From positions 124,001 through 188,000 of the IMG/VR virus record IMGVR_UViG_3300028654_000001: a DNA stretch of 64,000 nucleotides. One strand, 5' to 3'. The position numbers and the translations under genes are program-made. Below the pieces are notes generated by a model. It saw only the letters and a program-made list of their open reading frames with translations, was not told where the DNA came from and searched no databases. Of this stretch, positions 208 through 58,751 are shown piece by piece. Within the stretch, counting starts at the first letter, position 1, and the number at the start of each line of letters is the position of its first letter.

Positions 208-283
208 GTTACCTGAAGTTCGAAACGTAGTTCTCGAGATCAATCCTGTAACTGGTTGGACTCTCTAGTTCTATAGGTGACTA
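208..283 (+). promoter_or_regulatory. CRISPR leader (candidate)
   Basis: Non-coding stretch before the first consensus repeat; degenerate repeats are at the opposite end. Confidence 0.5.
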
Positions 284-2719
284 CTGGGGATCCTTGATTG
301 GATCCCCGTTCATTGAAACTCTCGATACAATGCTCCCAGAGGAAGCCTCTCGGTCAGCTGGGGATCCTTGATTGGATCCCCGTTCATTGAAACAGCTTCG
401 CCACGATGACCGTTTGCGCCTCCCCGTCTTCTGGGGATCCTTGATTGGATCCCCGTTCATTGAAACCCGTAAAGGCGTCAACGTCATCTCGATTCCCATT
501 CTTGCTGGGGATCCTTGATTGGATCCCCGTTCATTGAAACCTTTCAGTGCCGGTTCTCAGAGATGGGGAGAAGGACCTGGGGATCCTTGATTGGATCCCC
601 GTTCATTGAAACGATTGTGTGCAGAACGTCGTCGAGCGCGGTGCGTCCTGGGGATCCTTGATTGGATCCCCGTTCATTGAAACACGGAAACTTGCGGAAG
701 GTCGAATAAAGGGTGAGAACTGGGGATCCTTGATTGGATCCCCGTTCATTGAAACAATGTTGCTGTTTTCCCATCGCCACTCGCAGCGGTCTGGGGATCC
801 TTGATTGGATCCCCGTTCATTGAAACCATCTCGTTGACCATGGTCCCACCCACTACGAGTGGCTGGGGATCCTTGATTGGATCCCCGTTCATTGAAACCA
901 CGCTCTGAGAGGGGCATTCGTTACAGCAATGATGGCTGGGGATCCTTGATTGGATCCCCGTTCATTGAAACAAACGAGTCACGGCAATTGCACCGCGTAC
1001 TGGCCCGAGGTCTGGGGATCCTTGATTGGATCCCCGTTCATTGAAACAGGAGCTCTGCGTCTTGACGTAGGAGGCCTTCAGGCTGGGGATCCTTGATTGG
1101 ATCCCCGTTCATTGAAACCAAGTCCTCAAGTTCCTGCGATTCGCTCCGATCATTCTCTGGGGATCCTTGATTGGATCCCCGTTCATTGAAACGTCAATAA
1201 CCTAATGATTCGGTTCGCAGGCTCTGGGCCTGGGGATCCTTGATTGGATCCCCGTTCATTGAAACGAAGAGTATCATCGCTCGAAGTTTCACCTGTAGCA
1301 GGCTGGGGATCCTTGATTGGATCCCCGTTCATTGAAACGATCCACTGAAGACCCTGACTCCTCGGACTTAGGGCTGGGGATCCTTGATTGGATCCCCGTT
1401 CATTGAAACGGAGCCCTACCTAGTCTGTTCAAGAGCGAGGGAGAGCTGGGGATCCTTGATTGGATCCCCGTTCATTGAAACTGGAACCTTCTTCTGCTCT
1501 ACCGACAGACCGTTGAGCAGCTGGGGATCCTTGATTGGATCCCCGTTCATTGAAACGGCCCTCTTGGGCTGACACCCGGACCCATAAAGATCTGGGGATC
1601 CTTGATTGGATCCCCGTTCATTGAAACTTGGGTTTGATTTTGACTATCCGCTCTCCATAGCAGCTGGGGATCCTTGATTGGATCCCCGTTCATTGAAACG
1701 AGACCAAGACAAGGATTATTCCTCCTCGTCCAGTCTGGGGATCCTTGATTGGATCCCCGTTCATTGAAACACGTCCATGAGTCGCTTGGTCTGATTGGCG
1801 CAAAGTAGCTGGGGATCCTTGATTGGATCCCCGTTCATTGAAACTGGTTGAGGTGAAATCGGTTCGGGCAGCTCGTTGGCTGGGGATCCTTGATTGGATC
1901 CCCGTTCATTGAAACACTCAGCTCCCGAACTCGTTCGAGTCGCTCACGGACTGGGGATCCTTGATTGGATCCCCGTTCATTGAAACGACAGTAGCAACGC
2001 GTCCGAGGGCGGGAACTCTTGGCTGGGGATCCTTGATTGGATCCCCGTTCATTGAAACCTAATGATCGTGCCGAGCACCACGCTCGCTTGGATCTGGGGA
2101 TCCTTGATTGGATCCCCGTTCATTGAAACAAACGAGTCGGTCAACGATGTAGTACCAGTGACTGGGGATCCTTGATTGGATCCCCGTTCATTGAAACGAG
2201 TACCGCTATGATGCAACCGAGTGCGGCAGCCGACTGGGGATCCTTGATTGGATCCCCGTTCATTGAAACAAACCATCTCGCACCGTGACAACAGCCGAAC
2301 TGAACAACGGCTGGGGATCTCTCTGATGAGGTCCCCGATCATTGAAACAAACTACCCCCGCCTCACCCTTTGCGATTCGCCACAAGGCGCTGGGGACCCA
2401 TGATTGGGTCCCCGATCATTGAAACAAACTGGGATAACTACCTTCAAATTCTTGAAACCTTCAGGTCTGGGGACCCATGATTGGGTCCCCGATCATTGAA
2501 ACCTGCGAGTTCGGAACTCTACGGCTGTGGGTGGCGATCCCTGGGGACCCAATCATGGATCCCCGATCATTGAAATAAAATTGTGAATTCTATTAGGCTT
2601 ATCTCACAAAGTTTTGGGGGTCCCTAATGGGGGTCCCCGATCATTGAAATGATATTGCTCCGACCCTACCACCAGCAGAATTTCTTTGGGATCCATGATT
2701 GGGTCCCGTTCATTTAAAC
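284..2719 (+). CRISPR. CRISPR array, 34 repeats / 33 spacers, class-1-type hairpin repeat
   Basis: 28 identical 36-nt repeats CTGGGGATCCTTGATTGGATCCCCGTTCATTGAAAC (284-2269) plus 6 variant repeats (2311-2719); spacers about 32-41 nt; 8-bp stem GGGGATCC/GGATCCCC; the 3' ATTGAAAC end and right-hand degeneration indicate + orientation. Confidence 0.99.
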
Positions 2720-2742: not shown

Positions 2743-3459
2743 TCAGTAGTGAAGCTTCTCGTTGAGCTCGTTGATGAGCTCCTGCTCACGAGGTGAGATA
2801 GTTACCCGTAGTCGGATACCAACCCGCCTTGCTGTTTCGAGTATTGCTGCATCAGTCATGGTCATAAAGTTGGTGGCCTGATCTTCAATCAAGGTCCAGT
2901 TAGGGGTGTTGTTGAGGAACCTGAATGCTATCAGCGTACAGTACTCGGCCTTCTCAGTGGTACTGAGGCTACTTTGAGTCTCAGGGATCTCTTTTGTACC
3001 AGGCTCTCGAGAGGGTCTGATCTCATCCCAACACTCTTCAATTGGTTCGTCAGCCATCAGAAAACACCTCGAGTCACTTGAGCTATGGGATCTTTCAACA
3101 GTAGTCATTTTTTTGTATCCAGGTCGTGACATTTCTCTTACCAGAGCCTCGTCGGAGTACCTCAGCTTCTGAGTCCTCCACGAGTCCTCAACTACGCGTT
3201 GACCTGCAGGCCTCCACCGAGCAGGTGTGTCAGGGTCACCATGGATGTCTTCAACCTCTGGAGGGATCAGGCACTTGGTGAAGAGCCAGTCCAAACAGAA
3301 CTCACATACACTGAACTTGTACTTAGTACAATCATCAAGGGCACCCGCTCCGTTCCCAGGTGTCGAGTGAAAGCTCCCTTGGACCTCAGCGTCGACAAGT
3401 CCTACTCGTGGAGTGTTCGGTTCTAGTTGTAATGAGTGTCCACATACATTACAGGTCAC
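2743..3459 (-). CDS. hypothetical, CxxC zinc-finger N-terminus plus internal IESYW-type tag (possible fusion)
   Basis: ORF track; CNVC...CEFC; internal MADEPIEECWDEIRP from 3057. Confidence 0.75.
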   Translation of the reverse strand: MTCNVCGHSLQLEPNTPRVGLVDAEVQGSFHSTPGNGAGALDDCTKYKFSVCEFCLDWLFTKCLIPPEVEDIHGDPDTPARWRPAGQRVVEDSWRTQKLRYSDEALVREMSRPGYKKMTTVERSHSSSDSRCFLMADEPIEECWDEIRPSREPGTKEIPETQSSLSTTEKAEYCTLIAFRFLNNTPNWTLIEDQATNFMTMTDAAILETARRVGIRLRVTISPREQELINELNEKLHY

Positions 3460-3826
3460 TTAGTAGCCTTTCAAATCGGGTTGGTCGAGAACCTCTATAA
3501 GTCTCAGGACTCTCGTTTAGATAGGTATCGAGAATATCCAGAGCTAGATCACTCCAGTACTTCCTAGAGTTCAACTTCCTCATGGTCGGATCAGGGTTGG
3601 CCCTGTTGAACTTCACTCCAGTACTCTTGCACCCCCAGATACCAGTGTAGGTGACAATATTCGGGTCAGATTTCATATTGCGAAGATAGGCGACAAACCA
3701 AACTCTCTGAGGGTTTCGACCTAAGTCTACTACGATAGTCACCTTGTACAGCTTGGAGGCCTCAGAATCTCTGACGATAATATCCCGAACTTGTTGAATT
3801 CGTTGGTCTAGAACTTCAAGAGGCAT
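3449..3826 (-). CDS. hypothetical with C-terminal PTRFER tag
   Basis: Ends RPTRFERLLSDL; overlaps neighbours by a few nt. Confidence 0.85.
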   Translation of the reverse strand: MPLEVLDQRIQQVRDIIVRDSEASKLYKVTIVVDLGRNPQRVWFVAYLRNMKSDPNIVTYTGIWGCKSTGVKFNRANPDPTMRKLNSRKYWSDLALDILDTYLNESPETYRGSRPTRFERLLSDL

Positions 3827-4322
3827 CACTCTCGTCCTTGATGATCCGCTCGAATCGCGTGGGCCTGGACTCTACAGGTGGACTACCCGTAGCTCTAACT
3901 AAGTGAGCATGACGTAGATCCATATATAGATAGCTTGTTGGTCCACAGTTATCGCAATAACAAGGACCTATGGGTATAATGTAGTTCTCTGCACTCAAGG
4001 GAGTCTCAGTGAGGAATCCCATACCCATAAATGGTTGCAAGTCAGGTGACTCGCTAATCTCGTTCATCATGGTGGTAGACTCCGATTGGATACGCTCGAA
4101 GTCTTCATCAGTATACACTCCCGGATCAGTGGTATCTAATACGTTGGTGGTTACTTGGAAAGGTCCGCAGCGAGTAGTAACCTCCACACGACCCTCTTGA
4201 ACCGTTGAGACTCTTGTAGCCAATTGATTACAGATGCAGCAACGAACGGCGTACTTCTCAAGGAGTTCCTTGGTGGTGAGGATCATCAAGTCAATCATCC
4301 GGATATTGGTAGTAGCCGACAA
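3816..4322 (-). CDS. Cys-rich hypothetical with C-terminal PTRFER tag
   Basis: CCICN...CYCDNC; ends RPTRFERIIKDESDAS. Confidence 0.85.
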   Translation of the reverse strand: MSATTNIRMIDLMILTTKELLEKYAVRCCICNQLATRVSTVQEGRVEVTTRCGPFQVTTNVLDTTDPGVYTDEDFERIQSESTTMMNEISESPDLQPFMGMGFLTETPLSAENYIIPIGPCYCDNCGPTSYLYMDLRHAHLVRATGSPPVESRPTRFERIIKDESDAS

Positions 4323-7885: not shown

Positions 7886-8131
7886 TCAGGGCTCCTCGAA
7901 GATGTGGAGCTTGCCAACAGGAACGTCCTCACAACGCACCGTAGCCATCGTCTGGAGACTGGTACCCCAACCAGAGGTAGCGAAGCATATAGGTGCCCCA
8001 GGGTACTTCATGAAGGTAATGCTGTTAGGAGTCGGATTCCTTGACCTGTAGCTCAGGTAGGCCACTAGAATGGAAAGTGTCCCAACAATTACCAAACCAA
8101 CTATCAACTTTACTCTGAACATACTGATCAC
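7886..8131 (-). CDS. small membrane-anchored protein
   Basis: N-terminal hydrophobic helix LIVGLVIVGTLSILVAYL. Confidence 0.75.
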   Translation of the reverse strand: MISMFRVKLIVGLVIVGTLSILVAYLSYRSRNPTPNSITFMKYPGAPICFATSGWGTSLQTMATVRCEDVPVGKLHIFEEP

Positions 8132-8496
8132 ATCCCTAGGTTCTCCAACTCGAGTAAGATCTGGTCAGGCTCATTGGTTAACCTAGTGGCAGTTATACGC
8201 CTACGACTAAGACTCTGAAAGTAACTCCATAACGGACCTGAAGGTGTTTTACTTGCATCCGATCGTTTGATCATGAACAACATACCACAAGAGCACTTGA
8301 ACCATATCTCTTGTTCCACTACGGTGATTTCTCCGTGGCCTTGAAAACTATGGTTAGCAGCTGCACGCAATAAAATAGGAATAGTGGTGAAGGTTGGTAT
8401 CCCAAGATTAGCCTCAGGCACCTTGGGGGATGCTGGTGGGAGTCGACCAGGACGGATCACCATCCACATAGATTCGATGTCATCGTCCTGAGTCAC
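8128..8496 (-). CDS. hypothetical with N-terminal IESYW-type tag
   Basis: MTQDDDIESMWMVIRP; H...CSC zinc-like motif. Confidence 0.85.
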   Translation of the reverse strand: MTQDDDIESMWMVIRPGRLPPASPKVPEANLGIPTFTTIPILLRAAANHSFQGHGEITVVEQEIWFKCSCGMLFMIKRSDASKTPSGPLWSYFQSLSRRRITATRLTNEPDQILLELENLGM

Positions 8497-9845: not shown

Positions 9846-10370
9846 TTAGTCGTTCTCGAGTATCCGTTCAAAGCGAGTCGGCCTTGGTCCAGTATACGAT
9901 TCAGAAAGCCTATTCGCCGGCATGTTATCAATCAACCGTCTCAAGTACCCCATCATAAACCCTACGGGTACGGTCATCTCGGATCCATTGAATTGGGGAG
10001 TGAGTTCCATGAGCGAGTAGCTTAGTGAAAGTACCCAAGTCAGGATTAGGTCTCCGGTGGTCGGGTGTTCAACATAGGTTGGCAAGGTGTGTTGCACCAC
10101 ATAGAGGGTGCCGTCCTGAGCTCCTGGGTTGTTAGACCACAGGACTAGATCTGCTAACAGACTCTGAACTTGATCTGCTATCACAAACCTTCTACCCTCG
10201 AAGGTCAGGCGGGGTAGCCGAAGGATATTCCCAATAGCGATCTCATGAGTAGTGGATACAGTTAGGTTTCGATTGATCCAAAGCACCTCATGGACCGTAG
10301 ATTCACGGGTGAAGTCTGCCACTTCCGAGTTCTGGCCACTGAGCACCCATAAACGGAGATTGACGGGCAC
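9846..10370 (-). CDS. hypothetical with C-terminal PTRFER tag
   Basis: Ends RPTRFERILEND. Confidence 0.85.
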   Translation of the reverse strand: MPVNLRLWVLSGQNSEVADFTRESTVHEVLWINRNLTVSTTHEIAIGNILRLPRLTFEGRRFVIADQVQSLLADLVLWSNNPGAQDGTLYVVQHTLPTYVEHPTTGDLILTWVLSLSYSLMELTPQFNGSEMTVPVGFMMGYLRRLIDNMPANRLSESYTGPRPTRFERILEND

Positions 10371-25229: not shown

Positions 25230-25717
25230 CTGCTCCCTGGGTCGAGTATCGAAACATAATCATGTTCCGTGACACTGATCACCGGGGGTCTCTTGTTGAG
25301 CATGTACTTGACGAGTTCGGTACATCCATTCTCACAAGCTTGGATCATGGCTAGAGGGTAGTCAGCATCGGATCGATGTTCTAGGTCCTGGAACATCTGG
25401 TACTGACCGTCTCGAGCAGCCATCTCGAGTGGAGAAAGAGGAGTACCTTTCCCTCCACCAAATACTGGAACAAAACCTCCCATGCGAGAGACCAAGAGAA
25501 TCTCTTCAGGGGTCCTGATAGCAGGGGCATCCTTGAGACGGGTGACGAGGATCGGGAACCCACGGCTGATAGCCCAGGCTAAGAAGATCCCTTCAGCGTT
25601 CGGGTGCTTCAAAGCCCCCTGAACAGCTTTCTTCGTACCCTTTTTCTCCTTTTCCACGTAGGAGGCGACGATCTCTTGCCAGGTAAGGTCCCTCCAGTCC
25701 TTAGGGCCAGGGGTCAT
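25175..25717 (-). CDS. protein with ankyrin-like C-terminal repeats
   Basis: TPLSPLEMAARDG...AMIQACENGCTELVKYML...HMEVLVLL. Confidence 0.6.
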   Translation of the reverse strand: MTPGPKDWRDLTWQEIVASYVEKEKKGTKKAVQGALKHPNAEGIFLAWAISRGFPILVTRLKDAPAIRTPEEILLVSRMGGFVPVFGGGKGTPLSPLEMAARDGQYQMFQDLEHRSDADYPLAMIQACENGCTELVKYMLNKRPPVISVTEHDYVSILDPGSRWNHMEVLVLLQAAGAGK

Positions 25718-26562
25718 AGAGCGATCTCAGGCCTGAGTTGAAGCTGTCCCTTTTTCACCACTTCGAAGAAGACGTAAGGCTCCTTCTTTGCGTAAGGCCG
25801 AGACCTCTCCTCTTCGAGCTCTCCAAGGAAGGCATAGAGCACTTCGCGATCGGTGGTAACCCAATGCTCGAACGAGTCATAGTTCTCAGTATGCTCAGGG
25901 TAACCGTGCCCAGGTGCCTCCCTAGAACGTTGGTCTCCTGGCACAAGTATGCTGTTCCTTGAGTAGATGAGCACTGCGTAGTGATGTCCCTCAGGGACAT
26001 CACCTGGACCTTTCACCCGAATCATCCCTTCAGAAGGTGTAGACCTAAGGTTGTTTGTGATTGCTCTATCAATGGCTGGACTAAAGTGATAGTAGTCCAT
26101 GTTGATGTCCCAAGGATTCTCGTAAAGAACTGGAGCTGGTCCATCCGGATCATCAATTACCCAGGCACGACTTATGATTCCTGGTCTGCTGACTCTGAAA
26201 CTGAGTTGGTACCCCTGAGTGTGACTGACGATGATCGGCCCACCAAAGTCCATGCTGGCTACAGGGGTGTCATCCTCCGGATGTATGAATAGACTTAGTC
26301 CATCAACTGTTACTGATTCCTTAGGCAGGTAACACCCTCTGAAGACAACAAACTTACGAGTCCAGATGCTGTACTCACCTCGTAGGTTGCGCTCCCTGCA
26401 ACTGATAGGCTCTGGCACTTTGATGCAGAGCCTATCATGGGATTCTCCAGCAAAAGTCAACCCAGCCCAAACGTAGGACTTGGGTGGATCTGGGTCTCGT
26501 CGGGAGCTTCGGTCAGGCCTGACATCACTCCAATACTCTTCGATGGGATCTTCATTGCTCAT
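25714..26562 (-). CDS. hypothetical with N-terminal IESYW-type tag
   Basis: MSNEDPIEEYWSDVRP. Confidence 0.85.
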   Translation of the reverse strand: MSNEDPIEEYWSDVRPDRSSRRDPDPPKSYVWAGLTFAGESHDRLCIKVPEPISCRERNLRGEYSIWTRKFVVFRGCYLPKESVTVDGLSLFIHPEDDTPVASMDFGGPIIVSHTQGYQLSFRVSRPGIISRAWVIDDPDGPAPVLYENPWDINMDYYHFSPAIDRAITNNLRSTPSEGMIRVKGPGDVPEGHHYAVLIYSRNSILVPGDQRSREAPGHGYPEHTENYDSFEHWVTTDREVLYAFLGELEEERSRPYAKKEPYVFFEVVKKGQLQLRPEIAL

Positions 26563-26577
26563 ATGGGGCCACCCAGG

Positions 26578-27045
26578 TCAGGGATCTCTCGCTCCAAAGC
26601 TCTCTCTATCGTGCACTAGAGTTGGTATTGATTCTGAAGTCTTGGTAAGCCAACATGCATTGAGGTATCCAAAACCCGTGATACGAAACCAAAGGTTGAG
26701 AGGTTCGTGTTTGGAAACCGTTCTCCTATAGAGGATTAGTCTAGCTATCGGCTCGTTTCCAACTTCTGATAGGTACAGGTGGAGGGCTTCAACCTCGTGC
26801 GACTCATTAGGTGCATAGTTGAGCTGGAAGACTTGGATCTCTTGTTCCCTTTCAGTCTCCTCAATGATAACTCTCATCGGGGCAGGGATCGGGATCATGA
26901 TGCGAGTCCCAACAGTCTTCCTCCTGGATATGAACCCTACCCAAGCGAAACCCCTTCCCTCTTGTTCGACCTTGGCGATCTCCTCTGCTGAGCGCCGGTT
27001 GGGTCTTATTAGCCCCCAATCAGATTCAATGCTGTCGTCGACCAT
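26578..27045 (-). CDS. hypothetical with N-terminal IESYW-type tag
   Basis: MVDDSIESDWGLIRP; body partly resembles the N-terminal half of 25714-26562. Confidence 0.85.
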   Translation of the reverse strand: MVDDSIESDWGLIRPNRRSAEEIAKVEQEGRGFAWVGFISRRKTVGTRIMIPIPAPMRVIIEETEREQEIQVFQLNYAPNESHEVEALHLYLSEVGNEPIARLILYRRTVSKHEPLNLWFRITGFGYLNACWLTKTSESIPTLVHDRESFGARDP

Positions 27046-47659: not shown

Positions 47660-47953
47660 TCAGCTAGGTCGATCCATAATGGTTGCAATGTTTTCTGGCC
47701 CGAACTCTACAAGCTCTCCGCACTCAGGAGCCCCTACGAAGAATGAAACGTTATCCAGGGTACCTTTGAATCGAGGTCCTGGTAGAACTTCCATAACCTT
47801 AACCCACATCCGGTCACAGCTCCCCGATGGGTAGTGGAAGTGAAGCTTGACGTAATCCCCTACTTGTAGTGCCTCCCGTTCAGTACGCTGAACAATATGG
47901 AAGGTTGTAGGATACTTCTGATTCATCTCTTCAACATTGGCTAGCGTGTACAT
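47660..47953 (-). CDS. DUF2314-like protein
   Basis: GDYVKLHF...DRMWVKV...GTLDN...VEFGPENI (from memory). Confidence 0.65.
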   Translation of the reverse strand: MYTLANVEEMNQKYPTTFHIVQRTEREALQVGDYVKLHFHYPSGSCDRMWVKVMEVLPGPRFKGTLDNVSFFVGAPECGELVEFGPENIATIMDRPS

Positions 47954-48393
47954 TAGATCACTGGCTCCCTCTCGAATCGAGTTGGGTGGGTGATGTCAAG
48001 AGACTTCAAATTGACTGGAGATACGAGCTTGTATCTCGGGTTGAACTCTGGAAGGTTCATCTCCACGTGGTGTCCACGGAAGTAGATGGTAACGTGCCAT
48101 ATCAAATGAGAGTGGAGGTCATCACCCAGGATGATCTGAACATTATCCTCGAAGGGGAATTCCAATACCCAGGAAGTGGCCATCCGATTCCTTTTTGGAA
48201 TTAGACGGTACAGCCCTGGCTCTAACCGATCTACTCGGCGTCCCTCAATATACTCTTCCTTAATGTGGCACTTGACAACTGCGTAGTTTGGGACATCAAT
48301 GACCAGAGCCTCTTGGTACTTAAGAGGGTTGAACTCTAGCTTGAACTTCATGCATGTGATGTCCTTGCCAGTCCGGTTGAACTTGATGATCAT
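47953..48393 (-). CDS. hypothetical with C-terminal PTRFER tag
   Basis: Ends HPTRFEREPVI; TTGACA-N17-TATGGT 8 nt upstream. Confidence 0.8.
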   Translation of the reverse strand: MIIKFNRTGKDITCMKFKLEFNPLKYQEALVIDVPNYAVVKCHIKEEYIEGRRVDRLEPGLYRLIPKRNRMATSWVLEFPFEDNVQIILGDDLHSHLIWHVTIYFRGHHVEMNLPEFNPRYKLVSPVNLKSLDITHPTRFEREPVI

Positions 48394-48496
48394 CCACAAG
48401 AACCATAAACCACGGTAATCTAGCTGTCAACGAATAACCAGGTTGTATCGGCCGTATAGCCTATTGTGAACTCCTCAAGATACGTTGGGTAACCAT

Positions 48497-48847
48497 TCAG
48501 TCAAGCCATCCTCGCTTTCGGCGGTAGGCCTTCTGAACGCTTCCGTATACCACCGTAAAGGTCCACTCATATGAAGAGAAAATACCCCCTGTGATGAACA
48601 GCCACCAGACCCAGCGGTGCAGCTTGTACCACCTGGGTCTGAACACAACACAGGTCTCTCCCTCGTAGTCAGATGCAGAAGCTCCGTCGACTGGTTCCTC
48701 GAGCAAGTACAAGGCCTCTTCAGAGATAGAGTAACCTTCGATCTTGGTCGGATTGATGTGGTCACATACACCGCCCTTGGGTGGCTCCTTCCCTGGTTTA
48801 CGCGGCGGGCGGAGACCTTCCCAGTAGGACTCGATGTCATCAGTCAT
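48497..48847 (-). CDS. membrane protein with N-terminal IESYW tag
   Basis: MTDDIESYWEGLRP; hydrophobic WVWWLFITGGIFSSY. Confidence 0.85.
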   Translation of the reverse strand: MTDDIESYWEGLRPPRKPGKEPPKGGVCDHINPTKIEGYSISEEALYLLEEPVDGASASDYEGETCVVFRPRWYKLHRWVWWLFITGGIFSSYEWTFTVVYGSVQKAYRRKRGWLD

Positions 48848-49182
48848 CAAAGCACATCCGGCCACATACGGGAAATTTCGTCAAGACGATTGAGCACCTC
48901 CTTGTTTTCATGAGGTTTATCGAAGTCATAATCAGTCAAGATTCCCTGAAAGTGCTCTCTGATTGTCCCGAAGCTGACTTCAACTCCAAAAGTGTTAAAT
49001 ACCGTAGAGATGTACTCCCGGATCTTCAAGTCAGCCGCAAAGGTGGGTACCAAAACCCTTCGGCTAATCCTAATCAAAGCCTTCAGCAAGACCATGGAAT
49101 TGATAGACTTTTCGACTATCAACTGAGGACGAACCACCTCCCAATAGGACTCGATGCTATCAGTCCTTGATCCTGTAGCCAT
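48847..49182 (-). CDS. hypothetical with N-terminal IESYW tag
   Basis: MATGSRTDSIESYWEVVRP. Confidence 0.85.
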   Translation of the reverse strand: MATGSRTDSIESYWEVVRPQLIVEKSINSMVLLKALIRISRRVLVPTFAADLKIREYISTVFNTFGVEVSFGTIREHFQGILTDYDFDKPHENKEVLNRLDEISRMWPDVL

Positions 49183-49258
49183 CTAACCAACCTAAATCTT
49201 TGTAATTAGGGCGAACCACTTCCCAATAGGACTCGATGCTGTCTTCAGGTTTAGTCAC
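49160..49258 (-). CDS. 32-aa tag-only micro-protein
   Basis: GTG 1 nt after the upstream stop; MTKPEDSIESYWEVVRPNYKDLGWLDGYRIKD. Confidence 0.6.
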   Translation of the reverse strand: MTKPEDSIESYWEVVRPNYKDLGWLDGYRIKD

Positions 49259-49259
49259 T

Positions 49260-50735
49260 CTAGGCTGGATCCTCTAAAGAGAAGTCATCCTCAGAAGGCT
49301 CCTGGTTCCTACCCTCTATTGAATCCCTCGGAGGCTGGTAGGCACGTCTCTCGGTTGGGTAGAGCTCCTCTGGGCGAGGGAACGTGCCTGGGGCACTCAT
49401 AGGTAGGAACTCCACTCGGAAGTTAAGTAGTACTCTCCTACGCCAGTCATCCTCCCCATAGTGGTTGAAGGTTCTCCTTCCTAACTCATCAAGAGAGGTC
49501 TGTAGATTAGTGAGAACCCGCCTGTTGAGGGGTTCTGCCATGTTATCGGATGTCTCAATGATTCCATTGAGCAGTAGGGCAACTCGCCTGAGGTTGATAC
49601 GGGTGTCATACTCCCGCTCATCATCGGAACGTCTCTCAGGTAACTCTAGGTCTGCTGTATTATGGCCTAGAAACATGGTACCAGCAGCAGCCATTCGTCT
49701 CTCATGTTGGGGTACCTCGTTCCTATTGATCTCCGACAATCTTGTTAGAGCATGACCATCATTCTCGCTTGTGAAGTATCTGCGAATCTCATCCTGAGTT
49801 GGTAGGTGTCCTACCATCCCCATGTACTGCTCAGTGTACGCTAGGATCCTACGATCTGCAGCAGTACTGTCATGGGCATGAGTCCCCTGTCGATGAACAC
49901 TCCCTCGACGAATATGGTAGGTCACCTCAAAGGTGTTGAGGGTATCTTGCCACCAATTAGTACGCATGTTGTGGGCAGCACCTTGAGCTTCAACCCAAGT
50001 GAACAACTCGGTGATGATCGAATCAATGTGCTCATCGTCCCCAACCCTGTCGACGAGTTCTTGAAGGTTGCTCAGTAGTAGGGCCAATCTTCGCATATCA
50101 AGAATGGATTGGCTTTGGGACTCGCCCACTTCCTGAGGGGCTGCTACTTCTTGGGGTAAACTTGGAGACTGGATATCATCATCGAGACCCCCTACACGAA
50201 CAATCAAGTCTAGGATTCGTTCCTGAACCCTCATGCTCGAGATGAAGTGCCCACGCATAATGGATATCGGTGGGTATGAGCGGTTCTCCTTGCAGTACTC
50301 TAGAACGTAGTCACTGATCTGCTTATCTATCTCAGAAATGTTTTGAGTAGGAGTGTTTTGGTGCAGCCTTCTCAAGTACGCCCAGAGCTCACCCCCAGTC
50401 AGTGTTCGACTGTACAACTGACCCTGCACCACTCGGTCTAGCAGACTAACACACCCAGGTTTTGACCACTCTTCGAAGGTTATACGAATATCCTCGTAGT
50501 CAGGGTACTCATCCGTATTCCGGTGTTGCCGATTCAAATGAGTAATGATCTGGTTAGCATTCTCAGTCTGGGAAATGTACTCAGGGGGCGGATTTGCAAA
50601 CACTCGAGTCAGAATGTTGAGTATCTGTTGCCCACTAGGGTTCCATTGGTCCCGAGCCTCTTGGGGTACCCCTGGGGAGGATCGCAGTCCCTGTCGATGA
50701 TCCCAGTAGGATTCAACTTCATTATCGTCTGGCAT
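49260..50735 (-). CDS. large helical repeat protein with N-terminal IESYW-type tag
   Basis: MPDDNEVESYWD; internal repeat MRRLALLLSNL / LRRVALLLNGI. Confidence 0.85.
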   Translation of the reverse strand: MPDDNEVESYWDHRQGLRSSPGVPQEARDQWNPSGQQILNILTRVFANPPPEYISQTENANQIITHLNRQHRNTDEYPDYEDIRITFEEWSKPGCVSLLDRVVQGQLYSRTLTGGELWAYLRRLHQNTPTQNISEIDKQISDYVLEYCKENRSYPPISIMRGHFISSMRVQERILDLIVRVGGLDDDIQSPSLPQEVAAPQEVGESQSQSILDMRRLALLLSNLQELVDRVGDDEHIDSIITELFTWVEAQGAAHNMRTNWWQDTLNTFEVTYHIRRGSVHRQGTHAHDSTAADRRILAYTEQYMGMVGHLPTQDEIRRYFTSENDGHALTRLSEINRNEVPQHERRMAAAGTMFLGHNTADLELPERRSDDEREYDTRINLRRVALLLNGIIETSDNMAEPLNRRVLTNLQTSLDELGRRTFNHYGEDDWRRRVLLNFRVEFLPMSAPGTFPRPEELYPTERRAYQPPRDSIEGRNQEPSEDDFSLEDPA

Positions 50736-51213
50736 GATCATCCTCAGAATTAGACAAGAGATCACTCATCTCTTGAAAGTAACTCAAGCGTGGATCTTCA
50801 GGCCCAATGTTGAGGTCTTGGACTCTACTATCAATCACGTCTATCAACCTGGTGAAGTTGTAGCGGATCCCAGCTGAGTTCAAGAGATTACGTAATCGAA
50901 CCGTTGTATATACAAGCTCTCGAAAGAGAGACCCGTTTGATCTCTCTGTCCCGCTTAAGTGGTGCGAGTAGGGTGGGTCTGTAACGACGGAAGTGAAGGT
51001 TACGTTTGATTCTTCAACTTCAACAGGGGAGTCATCACCATAATCAATGGTGTAACGAGTCACGTAGGGGGTTGACTCCTCATCGGACTCAACTGGGTCT
51101 TCTAAAGCAACCACGTCGACAATAGGCACATTGGTTAGGGTACTCAGATCCCGCTGGGGTCGAAGTCCTTCCCAAAAGGACTCGATGTCATCAGTGTCAG
51201 TTGAGGTACCCAT
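50722..51213 (-). CDS. hypothetical with N-terminal IESYW tag
   Basis: MGTSTDTDDIESFWEGLRP. Confidence 0.85.
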   Translation of the reverse strand: MGTSTDTDDIESFWEGLRPQRDLSTLTNVPIVDVVALEDPVESDEESTPYVTRYTIDYGDDSPVEVEESNVTFTSVVTDPPYSHHLSGTERSNGSLFRELVYTTVRLRNLLNSAGIRYNFTRLIDVIDSRVQDLNIGPEDPRLSYFQEMSDLLSNSEDDHARR

Positions 51214-51297
51214 GCCTTCTTCTTGGCCGGCTTCGGGCCTACTGCATAGTACACCGGAAGATTGACTTTACAAGCCATTTTGGTGTAACTAAGGCCT

Positions 51298-51660
51298 ATG
51301 CCAACCGAGGAAAAGAATCTTGAGCTGACACTCTTAGGAATCAAGGTGGCTCGAAGGCCATTTGATCAGTCACGACCCGGGCTCTATTGGTACACAACCC
51401 GTGGCGGCTACAACATGAATATTTTCAAGAATCTGGCTAATATTGACAACCAGAAACCCTATGAGTGGTATTGCAGTACCGTTGGTTGCTCCTTCACAGC
51501 TAGTGGTAAAGAGTCATCGTTAGATGAAGCTATTAAAGAAGCTCATGTGCGTCTTGCTAACCACATTCTAGAGAAGTCCAATGTGGAGCAGACTGCCATA
51601 AACTTTCTCCCGAATAGTACCTCACGACCAACTCGATTTGAACGAGAACCGGTACTGTAG
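51298..51660 (+). CDS. hypothetical with C-terminal PTRFER tag
   Basis: Ends SRPTRFEREPVL; TTGACT-N18-TAACTA-N6-ATG. Confidence 0.85.
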   Translation: MPTEEKNLELTLLGIKVARRPFDQSRPGLYWYTTRGGYNMNIFKNLANIDNQKPYEWYCSTVGCSFTASGKESSLDEAIKEAHVRLANHILEKSNVEQTAINFLPNSTSRPTRFEREPVL

Positions 51661-51778: not shown

Positions 51779-52309
51779 CTAAAGGTACCGGATCATCTTC
51801 GTGAGAAGATCGAAGATCATCGGAGACTCAAAGGAAACCAGGATCACGTCATCCAAAGTTTCGTCCGTTTTCAGGAAAGCCTTGCACTCTCTTACTGCTA
51901 TCTCACAGGCTTTGTCTATTGGGTAACCGTAAGCTCCAGCACTGATGCTTGGGAAAGCAATCGAAGTACCGTACTGAGCTGCAAGCTTCAAACACTCTCG
52001 GTAACAAGAGGCTAAAAGATCAGCCTCTTGGTTAAACCCGCCCTTCCAGATGGGACCAACGGTATGAATCACGTGCCTGCAAGGCAGGCTGAAGGCTGGG
52101 GTGATGCGTGCTTCTCCGGTTGGGCACCTTACCCCAGGCTTCACTGGTATGACCGCCTTGCAAGCTTCTAGGAGCCTTGGACCTGCTGCAGCATGGATTG
52201 CATGGTCTACTCCACCACCTCCAAGCATTGCCTCATTGGCAGCATTGACAATAGTATCGACGTTAAGTTTTGTGATGTCAGCTTCGAGAGCCCTGAGTAT
52301 ACTAGGCAT
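51779..52309 (-). CDS. macro-domain O-acetyl-ADP-ribose deacetylase / ADP-ribosyl hydrolase (YmdB-like)
   Basis: DITKLNVDTIVNAANEAMLGGGGVDHAIHAAAGP...HVIHTVGP...FPSISAGAYGYP. Confidence 0.95.
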   Translation of the reverse strand: MPSILRALEADITKLNVDTIVNAANEAMLGGGGVDHAIHAAAGPRLLEACKAVIPVKPGVRCPTGEARITPAFSLPCRHVIHTVGPIWKGGFNQEADLLASCYRECLKLAAQYGTSIAFPSISAGAYGYPIDKACEIAVRECKAFLKTDETLDDVILVSFESPMIFDLLTKMIRYL

Positions 52310-55555: not shown

Positions 55556-55756
55556 ATGCCATCAGATACCAAGAAAAACAAGCACGAGCATACGTTCAAA
55601 GATGGAGCAACCTTGAATTTAACTGCTAGTTCCAAGGGTCTGAAGATTGGTTGGCAGGAAGTTGGTAAGAGTAAGCATCCTGCAGTTACCTTGACTTGGA
55701 AGACAGTGAATCGTCTGAGTCGTCACCGCATGAAGCCAAAGACCGTTGTGGGGTGA
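55556..55756 (+). CDS. small basic hypothetical
   Basis: CCGGTG-TACTGA-N5-ATG. Confidence 0.7.
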   Translation: MPSDTKKNKHEHTFKDGATLNLTASSKGLKIGWQEVGKSKHPAVTLTWKTVNRLSRHRMKPKTVVG

Positions 55757-55757
55757 T

Positions 55758-56177
55758 ATGTCCGATATCATCTGGATGCCCGTCACCAGAATTCTATCAA
55801 CAGACCTTATGGTGTTGGGGGTAAAGTATCTCTTCGATTGGGATCGAAGGGTCTGGGTAGAGCATCAAGATGGTTGCTATGATGGTATACAATGGCACAC
55901 CATGTTCCTCTGTCGCGAAGTCGACGGTAAGAGTCAGTTCTGGCTTGAGGTTGTCCCAGCTACCGCCAAGTTACTGAGTGACTGTGGTCTTCGTGATGAG
56001 CATCTACTCAGAGCTATTGAACCAATACCACCTTGGCCGTCCAAGGTGGTGATGTTCTACATGGAGACCCAAGTAGCCGCTGCTCTGGTTGAATACCAAC
56101 CCGTGAAGAGTGTCTCGCCCTCTTGGTGGTTCAAGGATCTCCCTCCAACTCGGTTCGAGCGCGAAGATGTTATCTAG
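55758..56177 (+). CDS. hypothetical with C-terminal PTRFER tag
   Basis: Ends PPTRFEREDVI. Confidence 0.85.
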   Translation: MSDIIWMPVTRILSTDLMVLGVKYLFDWDRRVWVEHQDGCYDGIQWHTMFLCREVDGKSQFWLEVVPATAKLLSDCGLRDEHLLRAIEPIPPWPSKVVMFYMETQVAAALVEYQPVKSVSPSWWFKDLPPTRFEREDVI

Positions 56178-58160: not shown

Positions 58161-58751
58161 ATGGAGGACGACTTCGAAGAGTACTGGGCGGCTATCAGGC
58201 CTGAACGAAAACCGTCTATGAAGGATCTCCGGGACGAGCTCCTCAAGATTGCCAAACTTCGTGAAGAAGAGTGGGACTTGATGACCCATAGGAACTACCC
58301 TTCACCTCCCGAGAGCTTGTTCGAGGAGTCGCGTGAGGAACCCTTCTTCAATGGTCCAGGCGAGAGTATTCCGGCAGATTTACCACTGGTTGTCAATATT
58401 GGGAACCCTGATCTGGGAGATGTAGCAACCAGAGAGTACATCGAGTCTATTCTCCACACTTACTCTGAGGTGCATCAATTTCATATAGATGGAGGCGGAT
58501 CTGTTCGAGTTGACTACCCTCCATCAATTATTGGCGACGGTCCGATCTCTGGGGGTGGATCGCTTCTCATCACTACAGGTGAGGGTTTACAAGCTTCTAG
58601 CTGGGGTAGTACCAATGAGCTCAGGCTTGAACTACAGAATAACTCAGAATTCAGAGTTTTACAGGATCGAGTTACCAGACTCGAACAAGAAAATCGAGAA
58701 CTGCGATCTCGTGTGAATACCCTAGCATTAGCCATAAGGAATCGACGATGA
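58161..58751 (+). CDS. hypothetical with N-terminal IESYW-type tag and C-terminal coiled coil
   Basis: MEDDFEEYWAAIRP; LQDRVTRLEQENRELRSRV. Confidence 0.85.
   Translation: MEDDFEEYWAAIRPERKPSMKDLRDELLKIAKLREEEWDLMTHRNYPSPPESLFEESREEPFFNGPGESIPADLPLVVNIGNPDLGDVATREYIESILHTYSEVHQFHIDGGGSVRVDYPPSIIGDGPISGGGSLLITTGEGLQASSWGSTNELRLELQNNSEFRVLQDRVTRLEQENRELRSRVNTLALAIRNRR

What the first reader, a model, noticed from the sequence alone, without database searches (positions are those of the whole stretch)
48497..51213. Five consecutive tagged genes, a DNA-level tag duplication and a 32-aa tag-only peptide
Seen: five coupled minus-strand ORFs all start with the IESYW tag. The tag-coding DNA at 49126-49161 and 49208-49243 is 33/36 identical, and ACTGATGACATCGAGTCCT is shared by the 48847 and 51213 genes. 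The ORF at 49160-49258 is essentially the tag alone. Inference: the tag is a mobile coding cassette that captures new cargo by recombination, and the tag-only peptide could be a competitive decoy or a fresh duplication awaiting cargo.
Basis: partly seen in the sequence, partly recalled or inferred. Interest (0 to 1): 0.75.

Follow-up and report, generated by a model that had tools for sequence, protein, structure and literature searches.

The report
Protein address tags in a megaphage
Five neighbouring genes of a 512-kb soil phage start with the same short peptide, which marks at least 25 unrelated proteins of this phage; it is probably an address label that brings them to one phage-made destination, and the 32-residue "tag-only" gene is the leftover of a longer gene.

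Summary
Five translationally coupled minus-strand ORFs (window 51213-48497) each begin with M-x(1-7)-D-(D/S)-I-E-S-(Y/F)-W-E. The 33/36 match and the shared 19-mer are both exact.

The tag is not local. At least 25 genes of this complete 512,571-bp tailed megaphage carry it, always at the N-terminus, on bodies that are mostly unrelated. A profile search of 1.84 billion proteins finds only about 55 more, all from a small clade of soil and rhizosphere megaphage contigs.

- **Selection acts on the peptide.** Synonymous sites are largely scrambled. Between homologues the tag is 81% identical and the body 52%.
- **Architecture.** A two-turn amphipathic helix, an R-P-x-R cap, a proline-rich disordered linker, then the cargo. 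In the DUF7448 family only this clade's members carry the tag and linker.
- **A second tag.** At least 49 other genes end in P-T-R-F-E-R, and no protein carries both tags.
- **The 32-aa ORF.** It is an in-frame 111-nt deletion derivative of a 68-110-aa tagged gene kept at this position in relatives. It is not a fresh duplication.
- **No cargo swapping.** Related genomes keep the same tag-body pairs.

Best reading: a docking or targeting peptide for one phage-encoded receptor. My best guess for the destination is virion loading, as with the T4 capsid targeting sequence. The destination is unproven.

The parts
50722..51213 (-). Gene 1, 163 aa, N-terminal tag (tag core D8-R21 = 51151-51192)
   Evidence: Orthologues are 68% identical in G002 and 27% in G001, with the tag conserved.
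49260..50735 (-). Gene 2, 491 aa, degenerate tag NEVESYWDHR (50694-50723). No known family.
   Evidence: Orthologues are 80% identical in G002 and 38% in G001.
49160..49258 (-). Gene 3 remnant, 32 aa: tag (49208-49243) plus the last ~15 residues. An in-frame 111-nt internal deletion of a 68-110-aa tagged gene.
   Evidence: Alignment A3. Orthologues are listed. The sequence is identical in contigs from several runs.
48847..49182 (-). Gene 4, 111 aa, tag at 49126-49161. Its start overlaps the end of gene 3 by 23 nt.
   Evidence: Orthologue 84% identical in G002. L051 has a 196-aa version.
48497..48847 (-). Gene 5, 116 aa, consensus tag (48800-48841), proline-rich linker, and an aromatic-rich hydrophobic C-terminal segment (a possible membrane anchor, but below the usual hydropathy threshold).
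   Evidence: Orthologue 85% identical in G002.
51250..51256 (-). CGGTGTA motif 43 nt upstream of the gene 1 start; probable transcription or translation start signal of the operon.
2746..3057 (-). Other N-tagged gene in the window (MADEPIEECWDEIRPSR)
8131..8496 (-). Other N-tagged gene (DDDIESMWMVIRPGR)
25717..26562 (-). Other N-tagged gene (EDPIEEYWSDVRPDR); paralogue of the next gene
26581..27045 (-). Other N-tagged gene (DDSIESDWGLIRPNR)
58161..58751 (+). Other N-tagged gene (MEDDFEEYWAAIRPERK)
47953..48399 (-). Flanking gene with the C-terminal tag ...HPTRFEREPVI; absent at this position in G002
51298..51660 (+). Flanking divergent gene with the C-terminal tag ...RPTRFEREPVL; conserved in G002 and G001

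Best explanation
The IESYW motif is an N-terminal addressing (docking) peptide.

Its form is a two-turn amphipathic helix, D-D-I-E-S-(Y/F)-W-E-G-(I/L), with hydrophobic residues at positions i, i+3, i+4 and i+7. R-P-x-R closes the helix, and a proline-rich disordered linker of about 20-30 residues joins it to the cargo.

At least 25 otherwise unrelated small, mostly acidic accessory proteins of this 512-kb soil megaphage carry it. Five of them form one coupled operon in this window. A second tag at the C-terminus, P-T-R-F-E-R-(IL../E[DP]VI), marks at least 49 further proteins.

- Shown: the tag is real, strictly N-terminal, selected as a peptide, modular, specific to this clade, and stably attached to each cargo. 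The 32-aa ORF is an internally deleted remnant of a longer tagged gene.
- Inferred (about 0.7): all the tags bind one common receptor encoded by the phage itself.
- Best guess for the destination (about 0.35): the assembling procapsid or virion, so that pre-made accessory and anti-defence proteins are packaged and injected with the DNA. This is what the T4 capsid targeting sequence does for the diverse internal proteins, and what the first 30 residues of P1 DarB do.
For: - Distribution and position: 25 tagged genes, with the tag 1-8 residues after the start. All 25 lie outside the 250-480 kb structural and replication block.
- Peptide-level selection: codons are largely scrambled. Tag identity between homologues is 81% against 52% for the bodies. 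Gene 1 of G001 is 27% identical overall yet keeps the tag.
- Modularity: the bodies are unrelated. DUF7448 homologues outside the clade lack the tag and linker.
- Structure: the AlphaFold2 model gives helix 7-15, then residues 16-45 with almost no secondary structure and lower confidence (10-residue block pLDDT means 57-79), then a confident beta domain. The linker is 19.6% proline against 6.1% in the rest of the proteins.
- A phage-encoded rather than a host receptor: the profile search of 1.84e9 proteins gives 56 hits, essentially all N-terminal. The contigs examined are large phage-like ones. Both tags co-occur on every larger related contig.
- The capsid as destination: the only phage-built protein compartment I could detect is an HK97-type head module of portal, protease, Q-rich scaffold and MCP. 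I found no BMC shell, tubulin, ClpP or Lon.
- Cargo type: Pfam matches among the tagged proteins include a Tad2-like domain (anti-Thoeris family), an HTH/HNH-repeat match and a RecA-like ATPase. This resembles the T-even internal proteins, described as a highly diverse set of defence proteins sharing only a conserved CTS (PMC3012670).
- Precedent: the first 30 residues of P1 DarB are enough for capsid targeting (PMC9024508).
Against: - No direct evidence of any receptor or destination. The one complex prediction gave no answer.
- About 75-85 tagged species (roughly 10% of the genes) is many for virion cargo.
- The tagged genes sit in the small-gene accessory half of the genome, which may be expressed early.
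- There is no T4-type protease (Peptidase_S77) or Gp23, and no L/I-x-E or S/A/G-x-E cleavage motif follows the tag.
- One C-tagged cargo is a RecA-like ATPase, which would more naturally work in the cell than in a capsid.
- T4 internal proteins are basic, whereas these cargoes are acidic.
Confidence: 0.5

Rival explanations
1. The tags dock cargo to a hub inside the cell rather than to the virion. The hub could be a phage replication or transcription factory, an adaptor or a chaperone, working the way PIP-box or clamp-binding motifs at protein termini recruit many partners to one ring. Alternatively, the acidic N-tag helix could pair with the more basic C-tag, joining N-tagged and C-tagged proteins.
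For: - Terminal short motifs on many partners are the hallmark of hub binding.
- The tagged genes lie in the accessory, probably early, half of the genome.
- Cargo includes a RecA-like ATPase and HTH proteins.
- N-tags and C-tags never share a protein, and their genes are interspersed.
Against: - Core replication proteins (PolA, SNF2, UvrD) are untagged.
- N-tag and C-tag genes are adjacent 7 times against 3.8 expected, P = 0.08, which is not significant.
- No candidate hub was identified.
Confidence: 0.3
2. The tags are degrons or timers: terminal signals that hand a whole class of accessory proteins to a protease, so that they are removed at a set stage of infection.
For: - Bacterial AAA+ proteases read both N-terminal and C-terminal motifs (established knowledge of ClpXP substrate classes).
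- The tags sit on disordered linkers, which suit the start of unfolding.
Against: - The phage encodes no ClpP or Lon.
- A host-protease degron should also occur on host proteins, yet the profile search found the tag only on this clade's proteins.
- The sequence resembles no known degron class.
Confidence: 0.08
3. One reading: the tag is a mobile coding cassette that keeps capturing new cargo by recombination, and the 32-mer is a decoy or a fresh duplicate awaiting cargo.
For: - Unrelated cargo share the tag, and the tag is an add-on in DUF7448.
- Double-tag and tandem forms exist in relatives.
- There are hints of local conversion between the gene 3 and gene 4 tags.
Against: - Tag-body pairs are fixed across four related genomes and 26 homologue pairs.
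- Synonymous sites are scrambled.
- The 32-mer is a deletion remnant.
- This model describes how the family grew, not what the tag does.
Confidence: 0.1
4. The conservation reflects a nucleic-acid element at gene starts, such as a promoter, ribosome-binding signal or downstream box, and not a peptide.
For: - The genome lacks Shine-Dalgarno sequences and has a fixed-distance YGGTGTA motif before many starts. Unusual initiation signals therefore do exist here.
Against: - Codons at identical residues differ freely in both tags, including CGN/AGR arginine switches in the C-tag.
- The conservation pattern follows helix periodicity.
- The same peptide is kept at 27% overall identity.
Confidence: 0.02

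Closest known systems
T4 capsid targeting sequence (CTS) on internal proteins IPI, IPII, IPIII and Alt
   Same: A short N-terminal peptide directly after the start, with acidic-aromatic amphipathic character. It is shared by otherwise diverse small accessory and anti-defence proteins, and the genes sit in variable accessory loci (PMC3012670).
   Different: - No sequence similarity.
- No T4-type protease or Gp23 head.
- No L/I-x-E cleavage site.
- A proline-rich linker is present.
- Ten times more cargo species.
- The cargo is acidic, not basic.
- A parallel C-terminal tag exists.
- Virion location is untested.
P1 DarB N-terminal packaging signal
   Same: About 30 N-terminal residues are enough to send a protein into the capsid of a myophage; the cargo is anti-restriction (PMC9024508).
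   Different: It serves a single 250-kDa cargo, not a conserved motif shared by many genes.
Bacterial microcompartment encapsulation peptides and encapsulin cargo-loading peptides
   Same: A short amphipathic helix at either the N- or the C-terminus, joined to diverse cargo by a disordered linker, binding the inner face of a protein shell (PMC12339742, PMC4594438). Encapsulin shells share the HK97 fold with phage capsids (established knowledge).
   Different: The phage has no BMC shell gene. The sequences are unrelated. The shell here would be a DNA-filled capsid.
N-terminal signal peptides of PVC/Afp (eCIS) payloads; MIX-type N-terminal markers of T6SS effectors
   Same: N-terminal markers on diverse payloads that load them into a contractile, phage-tail-like injection device (PMC11495950). 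This phage has a contractile-tail baseplate gene.
   Different: eCIS signals are about 50 residues long and poorly conserved, and they need a dedicated AAA ATPase. Nothing here points to the tail lumen.
PIP-box and clamp-binding motifs; peroxisomal PTS1/PTS2
   Same: One destination or hub is read through short terminal motifs on many unrelated proteins, with distinct N-terminal and C-terminal signal classes.
   Different: These are analogies of logic only. There is no sequence or component homology, and the replication enzymes here are untagged.

Membership tests
T4-type capsid targeting sequence | Short peptide at the extreme N-terminus shared by diverse cargo | tested here: met
   25 genes, tag 1-8 residues after the start, bodies unrelated
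T4-type capsid targeting sequence | Removed by the prohead protease at an L/I-x-E site (T4 gp21, Peptidase_S77) | tested here: not met
   No Peptidase_S77 and no Gp23 in the genome, although neither family rang in any control genome, so absence is not proven. No conserved L/I-x-E after the tag. The phage has a different head maturation protease (phrog_18299) whose specificity is unknown.
T4-type capsid targeting sequence | Cargo present in the virion; tag sufficient to package a foreign protein | not testable with these tools
   Uncultivated phage with no proteome. The complex prediction gave no answer.
Compartment encapsulation peptide (BMC / encapsulin type) | Amphipathic helix plus disordered linker at either terminus of the cargo | tested here: met
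   AF2 gives helix 7-15 and a largely unstructured stretch at 16-45. Hydrophobic residues fall at i, i+3, i+4, i+7. The linker is 19.6% proline. A C-terminal counterpart tag exists.
Compartment encapsulation peptide (BMC / encapsulin type) | Cognate shell protein encoded nearby | tested here: inconclusive
   No BMC shell. The only shell-forming protein found is the HK97-type MCP at genome 403.6-404.4 kb, far from the tagged genes.
Sec/Tat signal peptide | Basic n-region, hydrophobic h-region of 10-15 residues (Tat: S/T-R-R-x-F-L-K) | tested here: not met
   The tag is acidic, has no hydrophobic core and no twin arginine.
   All 26 homologue pairs keep the tag. The locus is collinear in four genomes. 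Codon identity is only 45% against 36% expected. Tag gain is seen only at deep divergence, in DUF7448.

The most novel reading that the evidence does not exclude
A clade of uncultivated soil megaphages runs its own two-signal protein-addressing system. An N-terminal helix tag (DDIESYWEGIRPxR) and a C-terminal tag (PTRFER...) together route about 10% of the phage's genes' products, mostly small accessory and counter-defence proteins, to a phage-built destination. That destination would be the capsid interior for co-injection, or some other viral compartment. This would be a viral counterpart of PTS1/PTS2 or of microcompartment encapsulation peptides, on a scale not described for any phage.
Probability: 0.3. 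Interest if true: 0.85.

Novelty: new variant of a known kind. Interest (0 to 1): 0.72.

Why it matters
If the tags are addresses, they define at a stroke a functional class of about 75-85 otherwise unannotatable proteins in a huge phage. They also point to an unknown receptor.

- If the destination is the virion, this would be the largest known set of co-injected phage proteins. It would also give a ready-made, sequence-defined handle of about 15 residues plus a linker for loading foreign proteins into giant capsids.
- The motif is a cheap marker for this phage clade in soil metagenomes.
- The finding shows that terminal short linear motifs can be found systematically in phage genomes by looking for shared N- and C-terminal words.

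Tried and rejected
- **Family searches.** Pfam and PHROGs on the five cluster proteins found no family. The ESM Atlas gave nothing usable for genes 2 and 4.
- **Phage collection.** Megablast of the region against the phage collection gave no match.
- **Complex prediction.** I folded the tag (residues 1-26 of gene 5) with the MCP, scaffold residues 1-140 and protease residues 285-556. The result was "no answer", score 0.00. It is evidence neither for nor against binding.
- **Fold search.** Foldseek of the DUF7448 cargo model against the PDB gave nothing significant.
- **Promoters.** The sigma-70 promoter scan was not clearly above shuffles (12 against 6.6 ± 2.6) and did not help with timing. 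The YGGTGTA motif occurs before accessory and structural genes alike, so it cannot separate early from late classes.
- **Tag pairing.** N-tag and C-tag gene adjacency as a sign of pairing was not significant.
- **Double-tag origin.** I tested whether the L051 double tag descends from a unit like the 32-mer. The DNA alignment was too weak to decide.
- **Literature.** Searching for the motif strings returned nothing relevant.
- **Ideas considered and dropped.**
  - A SecM/RAPP-like arrest peptide: the W-to-P spacing is wrong and the second proline is not conserved.
  - Mimicry of the FtsZ C-terminal peptide: the resemblance is superficial and the terminus is wrong.
  - A PDZ ligand for the C-tag: only the ...VI subtype ends at a fixed distance from the C-terminus.
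Full report
**What the window is.** The window is bases 124,001-188,000 of a single 512,571-bp contig with 49% GC. The record is classed as a complete virus genome with direct terminal repeats. It is a tailed phage.
- It encodes family-A DNA polymerase and SNF2 helicase, both carrying inteins, plus UvrD and Baseplate_J.
- It has an HK97-type head module: portal, head maturation protease, a 479-aa acidic Q-rich scaffold-like protein and a 289-aa major head protein.
- Near-identical DNA occurs in rhizosphere and soil metagenomes.

**Check of the observation.**
- They overlap or abut at every junction, so they form one coupled unit.
- The two 36-nt stretches match at 33 of 36 positions. All three differences are synonymous third positions.
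- The 19-mer is shared exactly and occurs nowhere else in the genome.
- The 32-aa ORF is as described.
- Contigs from four sequencing runs are identical over the region, including contigs that span the 32-aa ORF, so it is not an assembly error.

**The tag is genome-wide and strictly N-terminal.**
- A regular-expression scan, then an HMM built from the tags, were run over all six-frame fragments of the genome. They find 16 strong and about 9 weaker members.
- In each case a start codon lies 1-8 residues upstream of the motif.
- The consensus is M-(A/P)-x-D-D-I-E-(S/E)-(Y/F)-W-x-x-(I/L/V)-R-P-x-R-x-P. W is invariant and E and R nearly so.
- All 25 lie at 18-234 kb or at 508 kb, outside the 250-480 kb structural and replication block.
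- The bodies behind the tag are unrelated by BLASTP except for two pairs.
- Few bodies match any family: DUF7448, an HNH-repeat/HTH match and a weak DUF7128 match.
- The proteins are small (32-491 aa) and mostly acidic.

**Selection is on the peptide, not the DNA.**
- At residues that are identical between two tags, the codon is also identical in 818 of 1829 comparisons, against 662 expected from codon usage. The excess is modest and most synonymous sites are scrambled.
- Across 26 homologue pairs drawn from related contigs and metagenomic proteins, the 14-residue tag is 81% identical while the aligned bodies are 52% identical. Every homologue keeps the tag.
- Gene 1 of the distant relative G001 is only 27% identical overall but retains DTDIESFWEWIRPPRE.

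**Architecture.**
- The hydrophobic residues fall at i, i+3, i+4 and i+7, flanked by an acidic N-cap and G-(I/L)-R-P.
- The 20 residues after the core are 19.6% proline, against 6.1% in the rest of the proteins.
- An AlphaFold2 model of the tagged DUF7448 protein was built on 37 sequences (mean pLDDT 87.6). It gives a helix at residues 7-15, almost no secondary structure and lower confidence from 16 to 45, and a confident beta domain from 46 to 165.
- Of the 120 best of 508 DUF7448 homologues, only the ~10 closest (153-169 aa) carry the tag and linker. The others start at the domain, with a median length of 127 aa. The tag and linker are therefore a clade-specific add-on to a pre-existing domain.

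**Distribution outside this genome.**
- A degenerate DNA pattern for the tag finds two related IMG/VR contigs. These carry 15 tags in 145 kb and 8 tags in 71 kb.
- The tag profile searched against 1.84 billion representative proteins gives 56 hits at E ≤ 0.001. One is a spurious repeat protein.
- In nearly all of the rest the tag lies within the first 30 residues. Four have an evident miscalled upstream start, and P0001 carries a second, internal tag as well.
- The ten looked up are rare metagenomic singletons, some on contigs of 297 and 304 kb full of small unannotated genes.
- The motif strings appear nowhere in the searchable literature.
- I take the absence of the motif from ordinary bacterial proteins as an argument that its receptor is encoded by the phage and is not a mimicked host hub.

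**The cluster in related genomes.**
- G002 is collinear with window 43-57.5 kb. Genes 1, 2, 4 and 5 are 68%, 80%, 84% and 85% identical.
- G001 is more distant (genes 1 and 2 at 27% and 38%) but keeps genes 1-2-3.
- A fourth relative, L051, keeps genes 2-3-4-5.
- Cargo bodies are therefore fixed, not shuffled, on this time scale.
- Gene 3 is the unstable member: 110 aa with two tandem tags in L051 and P0004, 74 aa in G001, 68 aa in G002 and 32 aa here.
- The DNA alignment shows that the window copy has lost 111 nt in frame. It retains the start, the tag and the last residues, which overlap the start of gene 4.
- Keeping an open frame that ends inside the start of gene 4 may simply preserve translational coupling. 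That is inference.
- In G001 a different 47-aa tagged ORF follows gene 3.
- The window has two extra genes (47660-48399) that G002 lacks. There is gene turnover, but not tag swapping.

**DNA-level exchange between tags.**
- The tags of genes 3 and 4 are each other's closest relatives, sharing DSIESYWEVVRP. In G002 they share a further 31 identical bases.
- The window's gene 4 tag differs from gene 3 tags at 2-3 of 36 positions, but from its own G002 orthologue's tag at 7 of 36.
- Both window copies share GTG where the three other tags compared (G002 genes 3 and 4, G001 gene 3) have GTA.
- This suggests tandem origin and perhaps local conversion, but it rests on a handful of sites.
- Double-tag proteins (P0002, P0004) and a tag-cargo-tag-cargo fusion (P0001) show that duplications involving the tag recur.
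- N-tagged genes are adjacent to each other more often than chance: 5 against 0.84 expected, P = 0.0014.

**A second tag.**
- While checking the flanks I found that both neighbours of the cluster end in PTRFEREPV(I/L).
- Genome-wide, the core [TS]R[FLYM][ED]R lies within 16 residues of a stop in 67 six-frame fragments, against 18 elsewhere. It is present in 49 genes of my crude gene list.
- There are two subtypes: ...PTRFER(I/V)L-x-(D/E)(D/E).. and ...PTRFERE(D/P)VI-stop.
- Its codons are fully scrambled, including all six arginine codons.
- N-tags and C-tags never occur on the same protein. They co-occur on every larger related contig.
- Among 27 C-tagged proteins, one matches RecA/KaiC-like ATPases and one matches the Tad2-like (anti-Thoeris) domain.
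- Together the two tags mark roughly a tenth of the phage's genes.

**Mechanism.**
- The anatomy is that of a targeting or docking peptide: a short amphipathic helix, a flexible linker, any cargo, at either terminus, mutually exclusive, clade-specific and under purifying selection.
- Known systems with this logic are:
  - the T4 capsid targeting sequence on the diverse internal proteins (PMC3012670);
  - the P1 DarB N-terminal signal (PMC9024508);
  - eCIS payload signal peptides (PMC11495950).
- In this genome the only protein shell I can find is the capsid. BMC shell, tubulin, ClpP and Lon searches were all negative, with positive controls.
- I therefore favour loading into the procapsid or virion for co-injection, at about 0.35.
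- The points against are real:
  - there are many cargo species;
  - the tagged genes lie in the accessory half of the genome;
  - the cargo is acidic;
  - no recognisable cleavage site follows the tag;
  - a RecA-like cargo fits poorly.
- A cytoplasmic hub, or pairing between the N-tag and the C-tag, is nearly as likely (0.3). A degron is less so (0.08). A nucleic-acid explanation is effectively excluded by codon scrambling.
- The single complex prediction allowed returned no answer and counts for nothing either way.

**Verdict.**
- The reading is wrong in its specifics: there is no ongoing cargo capture, and the 32-mer is a deletion remnant.
- The function is inferred only by analogy.

Noticed in passing
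window 47953-48399(-), 51298-51660(+), 55746-56177(+), 3449-3829(-), 3816-4322(-), 9846-10370(-); genome-wide 10-290 kb and 502 kb: A second, larger tag family. At least 49 genes end in P-T-R-F-E-R-(I/V)-L-x-acidic or P-T-R-F-E-R-E-(D/P)-V-I. It is conserved as a peptide (codons scrambled), never combined with the N-tag, and co-occurs with it on related contigs.
   Followed up: partly
genome-wide; window 51250-51256(-) and 51281-51287(+): The DNA motif YGGTGTA starts 16-20 nt upstream of the start codon of many genes, roughly 45-60. It is enriched 15-fold in upstream regions, and Shine-Dalgarno sequences are absent. It is probably a phage promoter giving near-leaderless mRNAs, or an unusual initiation signal.
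   Followed up: partly
window 47660-48399: Two genes, a 97-aa ORF and the C-tagged 148-aa ORF, are present here but absent between gene 5 and the MPTIEVGEF gene in relative G002. This is an insertion/deletion difference right next to the cluster.
   Followed up: no
window 281-2049 and genome 113.6-116.1 kb: Twelve small tandem paralogues share an N-terminal ...(C/R)FNERG... word. This is another repeated family of unknown function.
   Followed up: no
L001:847-5112(-) and L001:8561-11662(-) (genome 295.8-306.7 kb): DNA polymerase A and an SNF2-family helicase each carry an intein with a LAGLIDADG domain.
   Followed up: no
L006:13389-14138(-) (genome 408.4-409.1 kb, between portal and protease): A 249-aa head-module protein starts MEREPNLIDYWSLVKE, which faintly resembles the tag, and ends in paired CxxC motifs. 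It is not picked up by the tag HMM.
   Followed up: no
one of the 27 C-tagged proteins of alignment A5; probably L018:10105-10578(-), though the scan does not report which member matched: A C-tagged protein matches the Tad2-like (Thoeris anti-defence) Pfam domain at E = 1.7e-4. This hints that the tagged cargo includes counter-defence proteins.
   Followed up: no
L029:505-1945(-) (G001): The gene 2 orthologue in G001 appears split into two overlapping ORFs (713-1945 and 505-747). This may be a frameshift or a sequencing error.
   Followed up: no
window 51779-52309(-): A macro-domain protein (E = 1e-42) lies just upstream of the cluster region and is conserved in G002 (86%) and G001 (74%).
   Followed up: no
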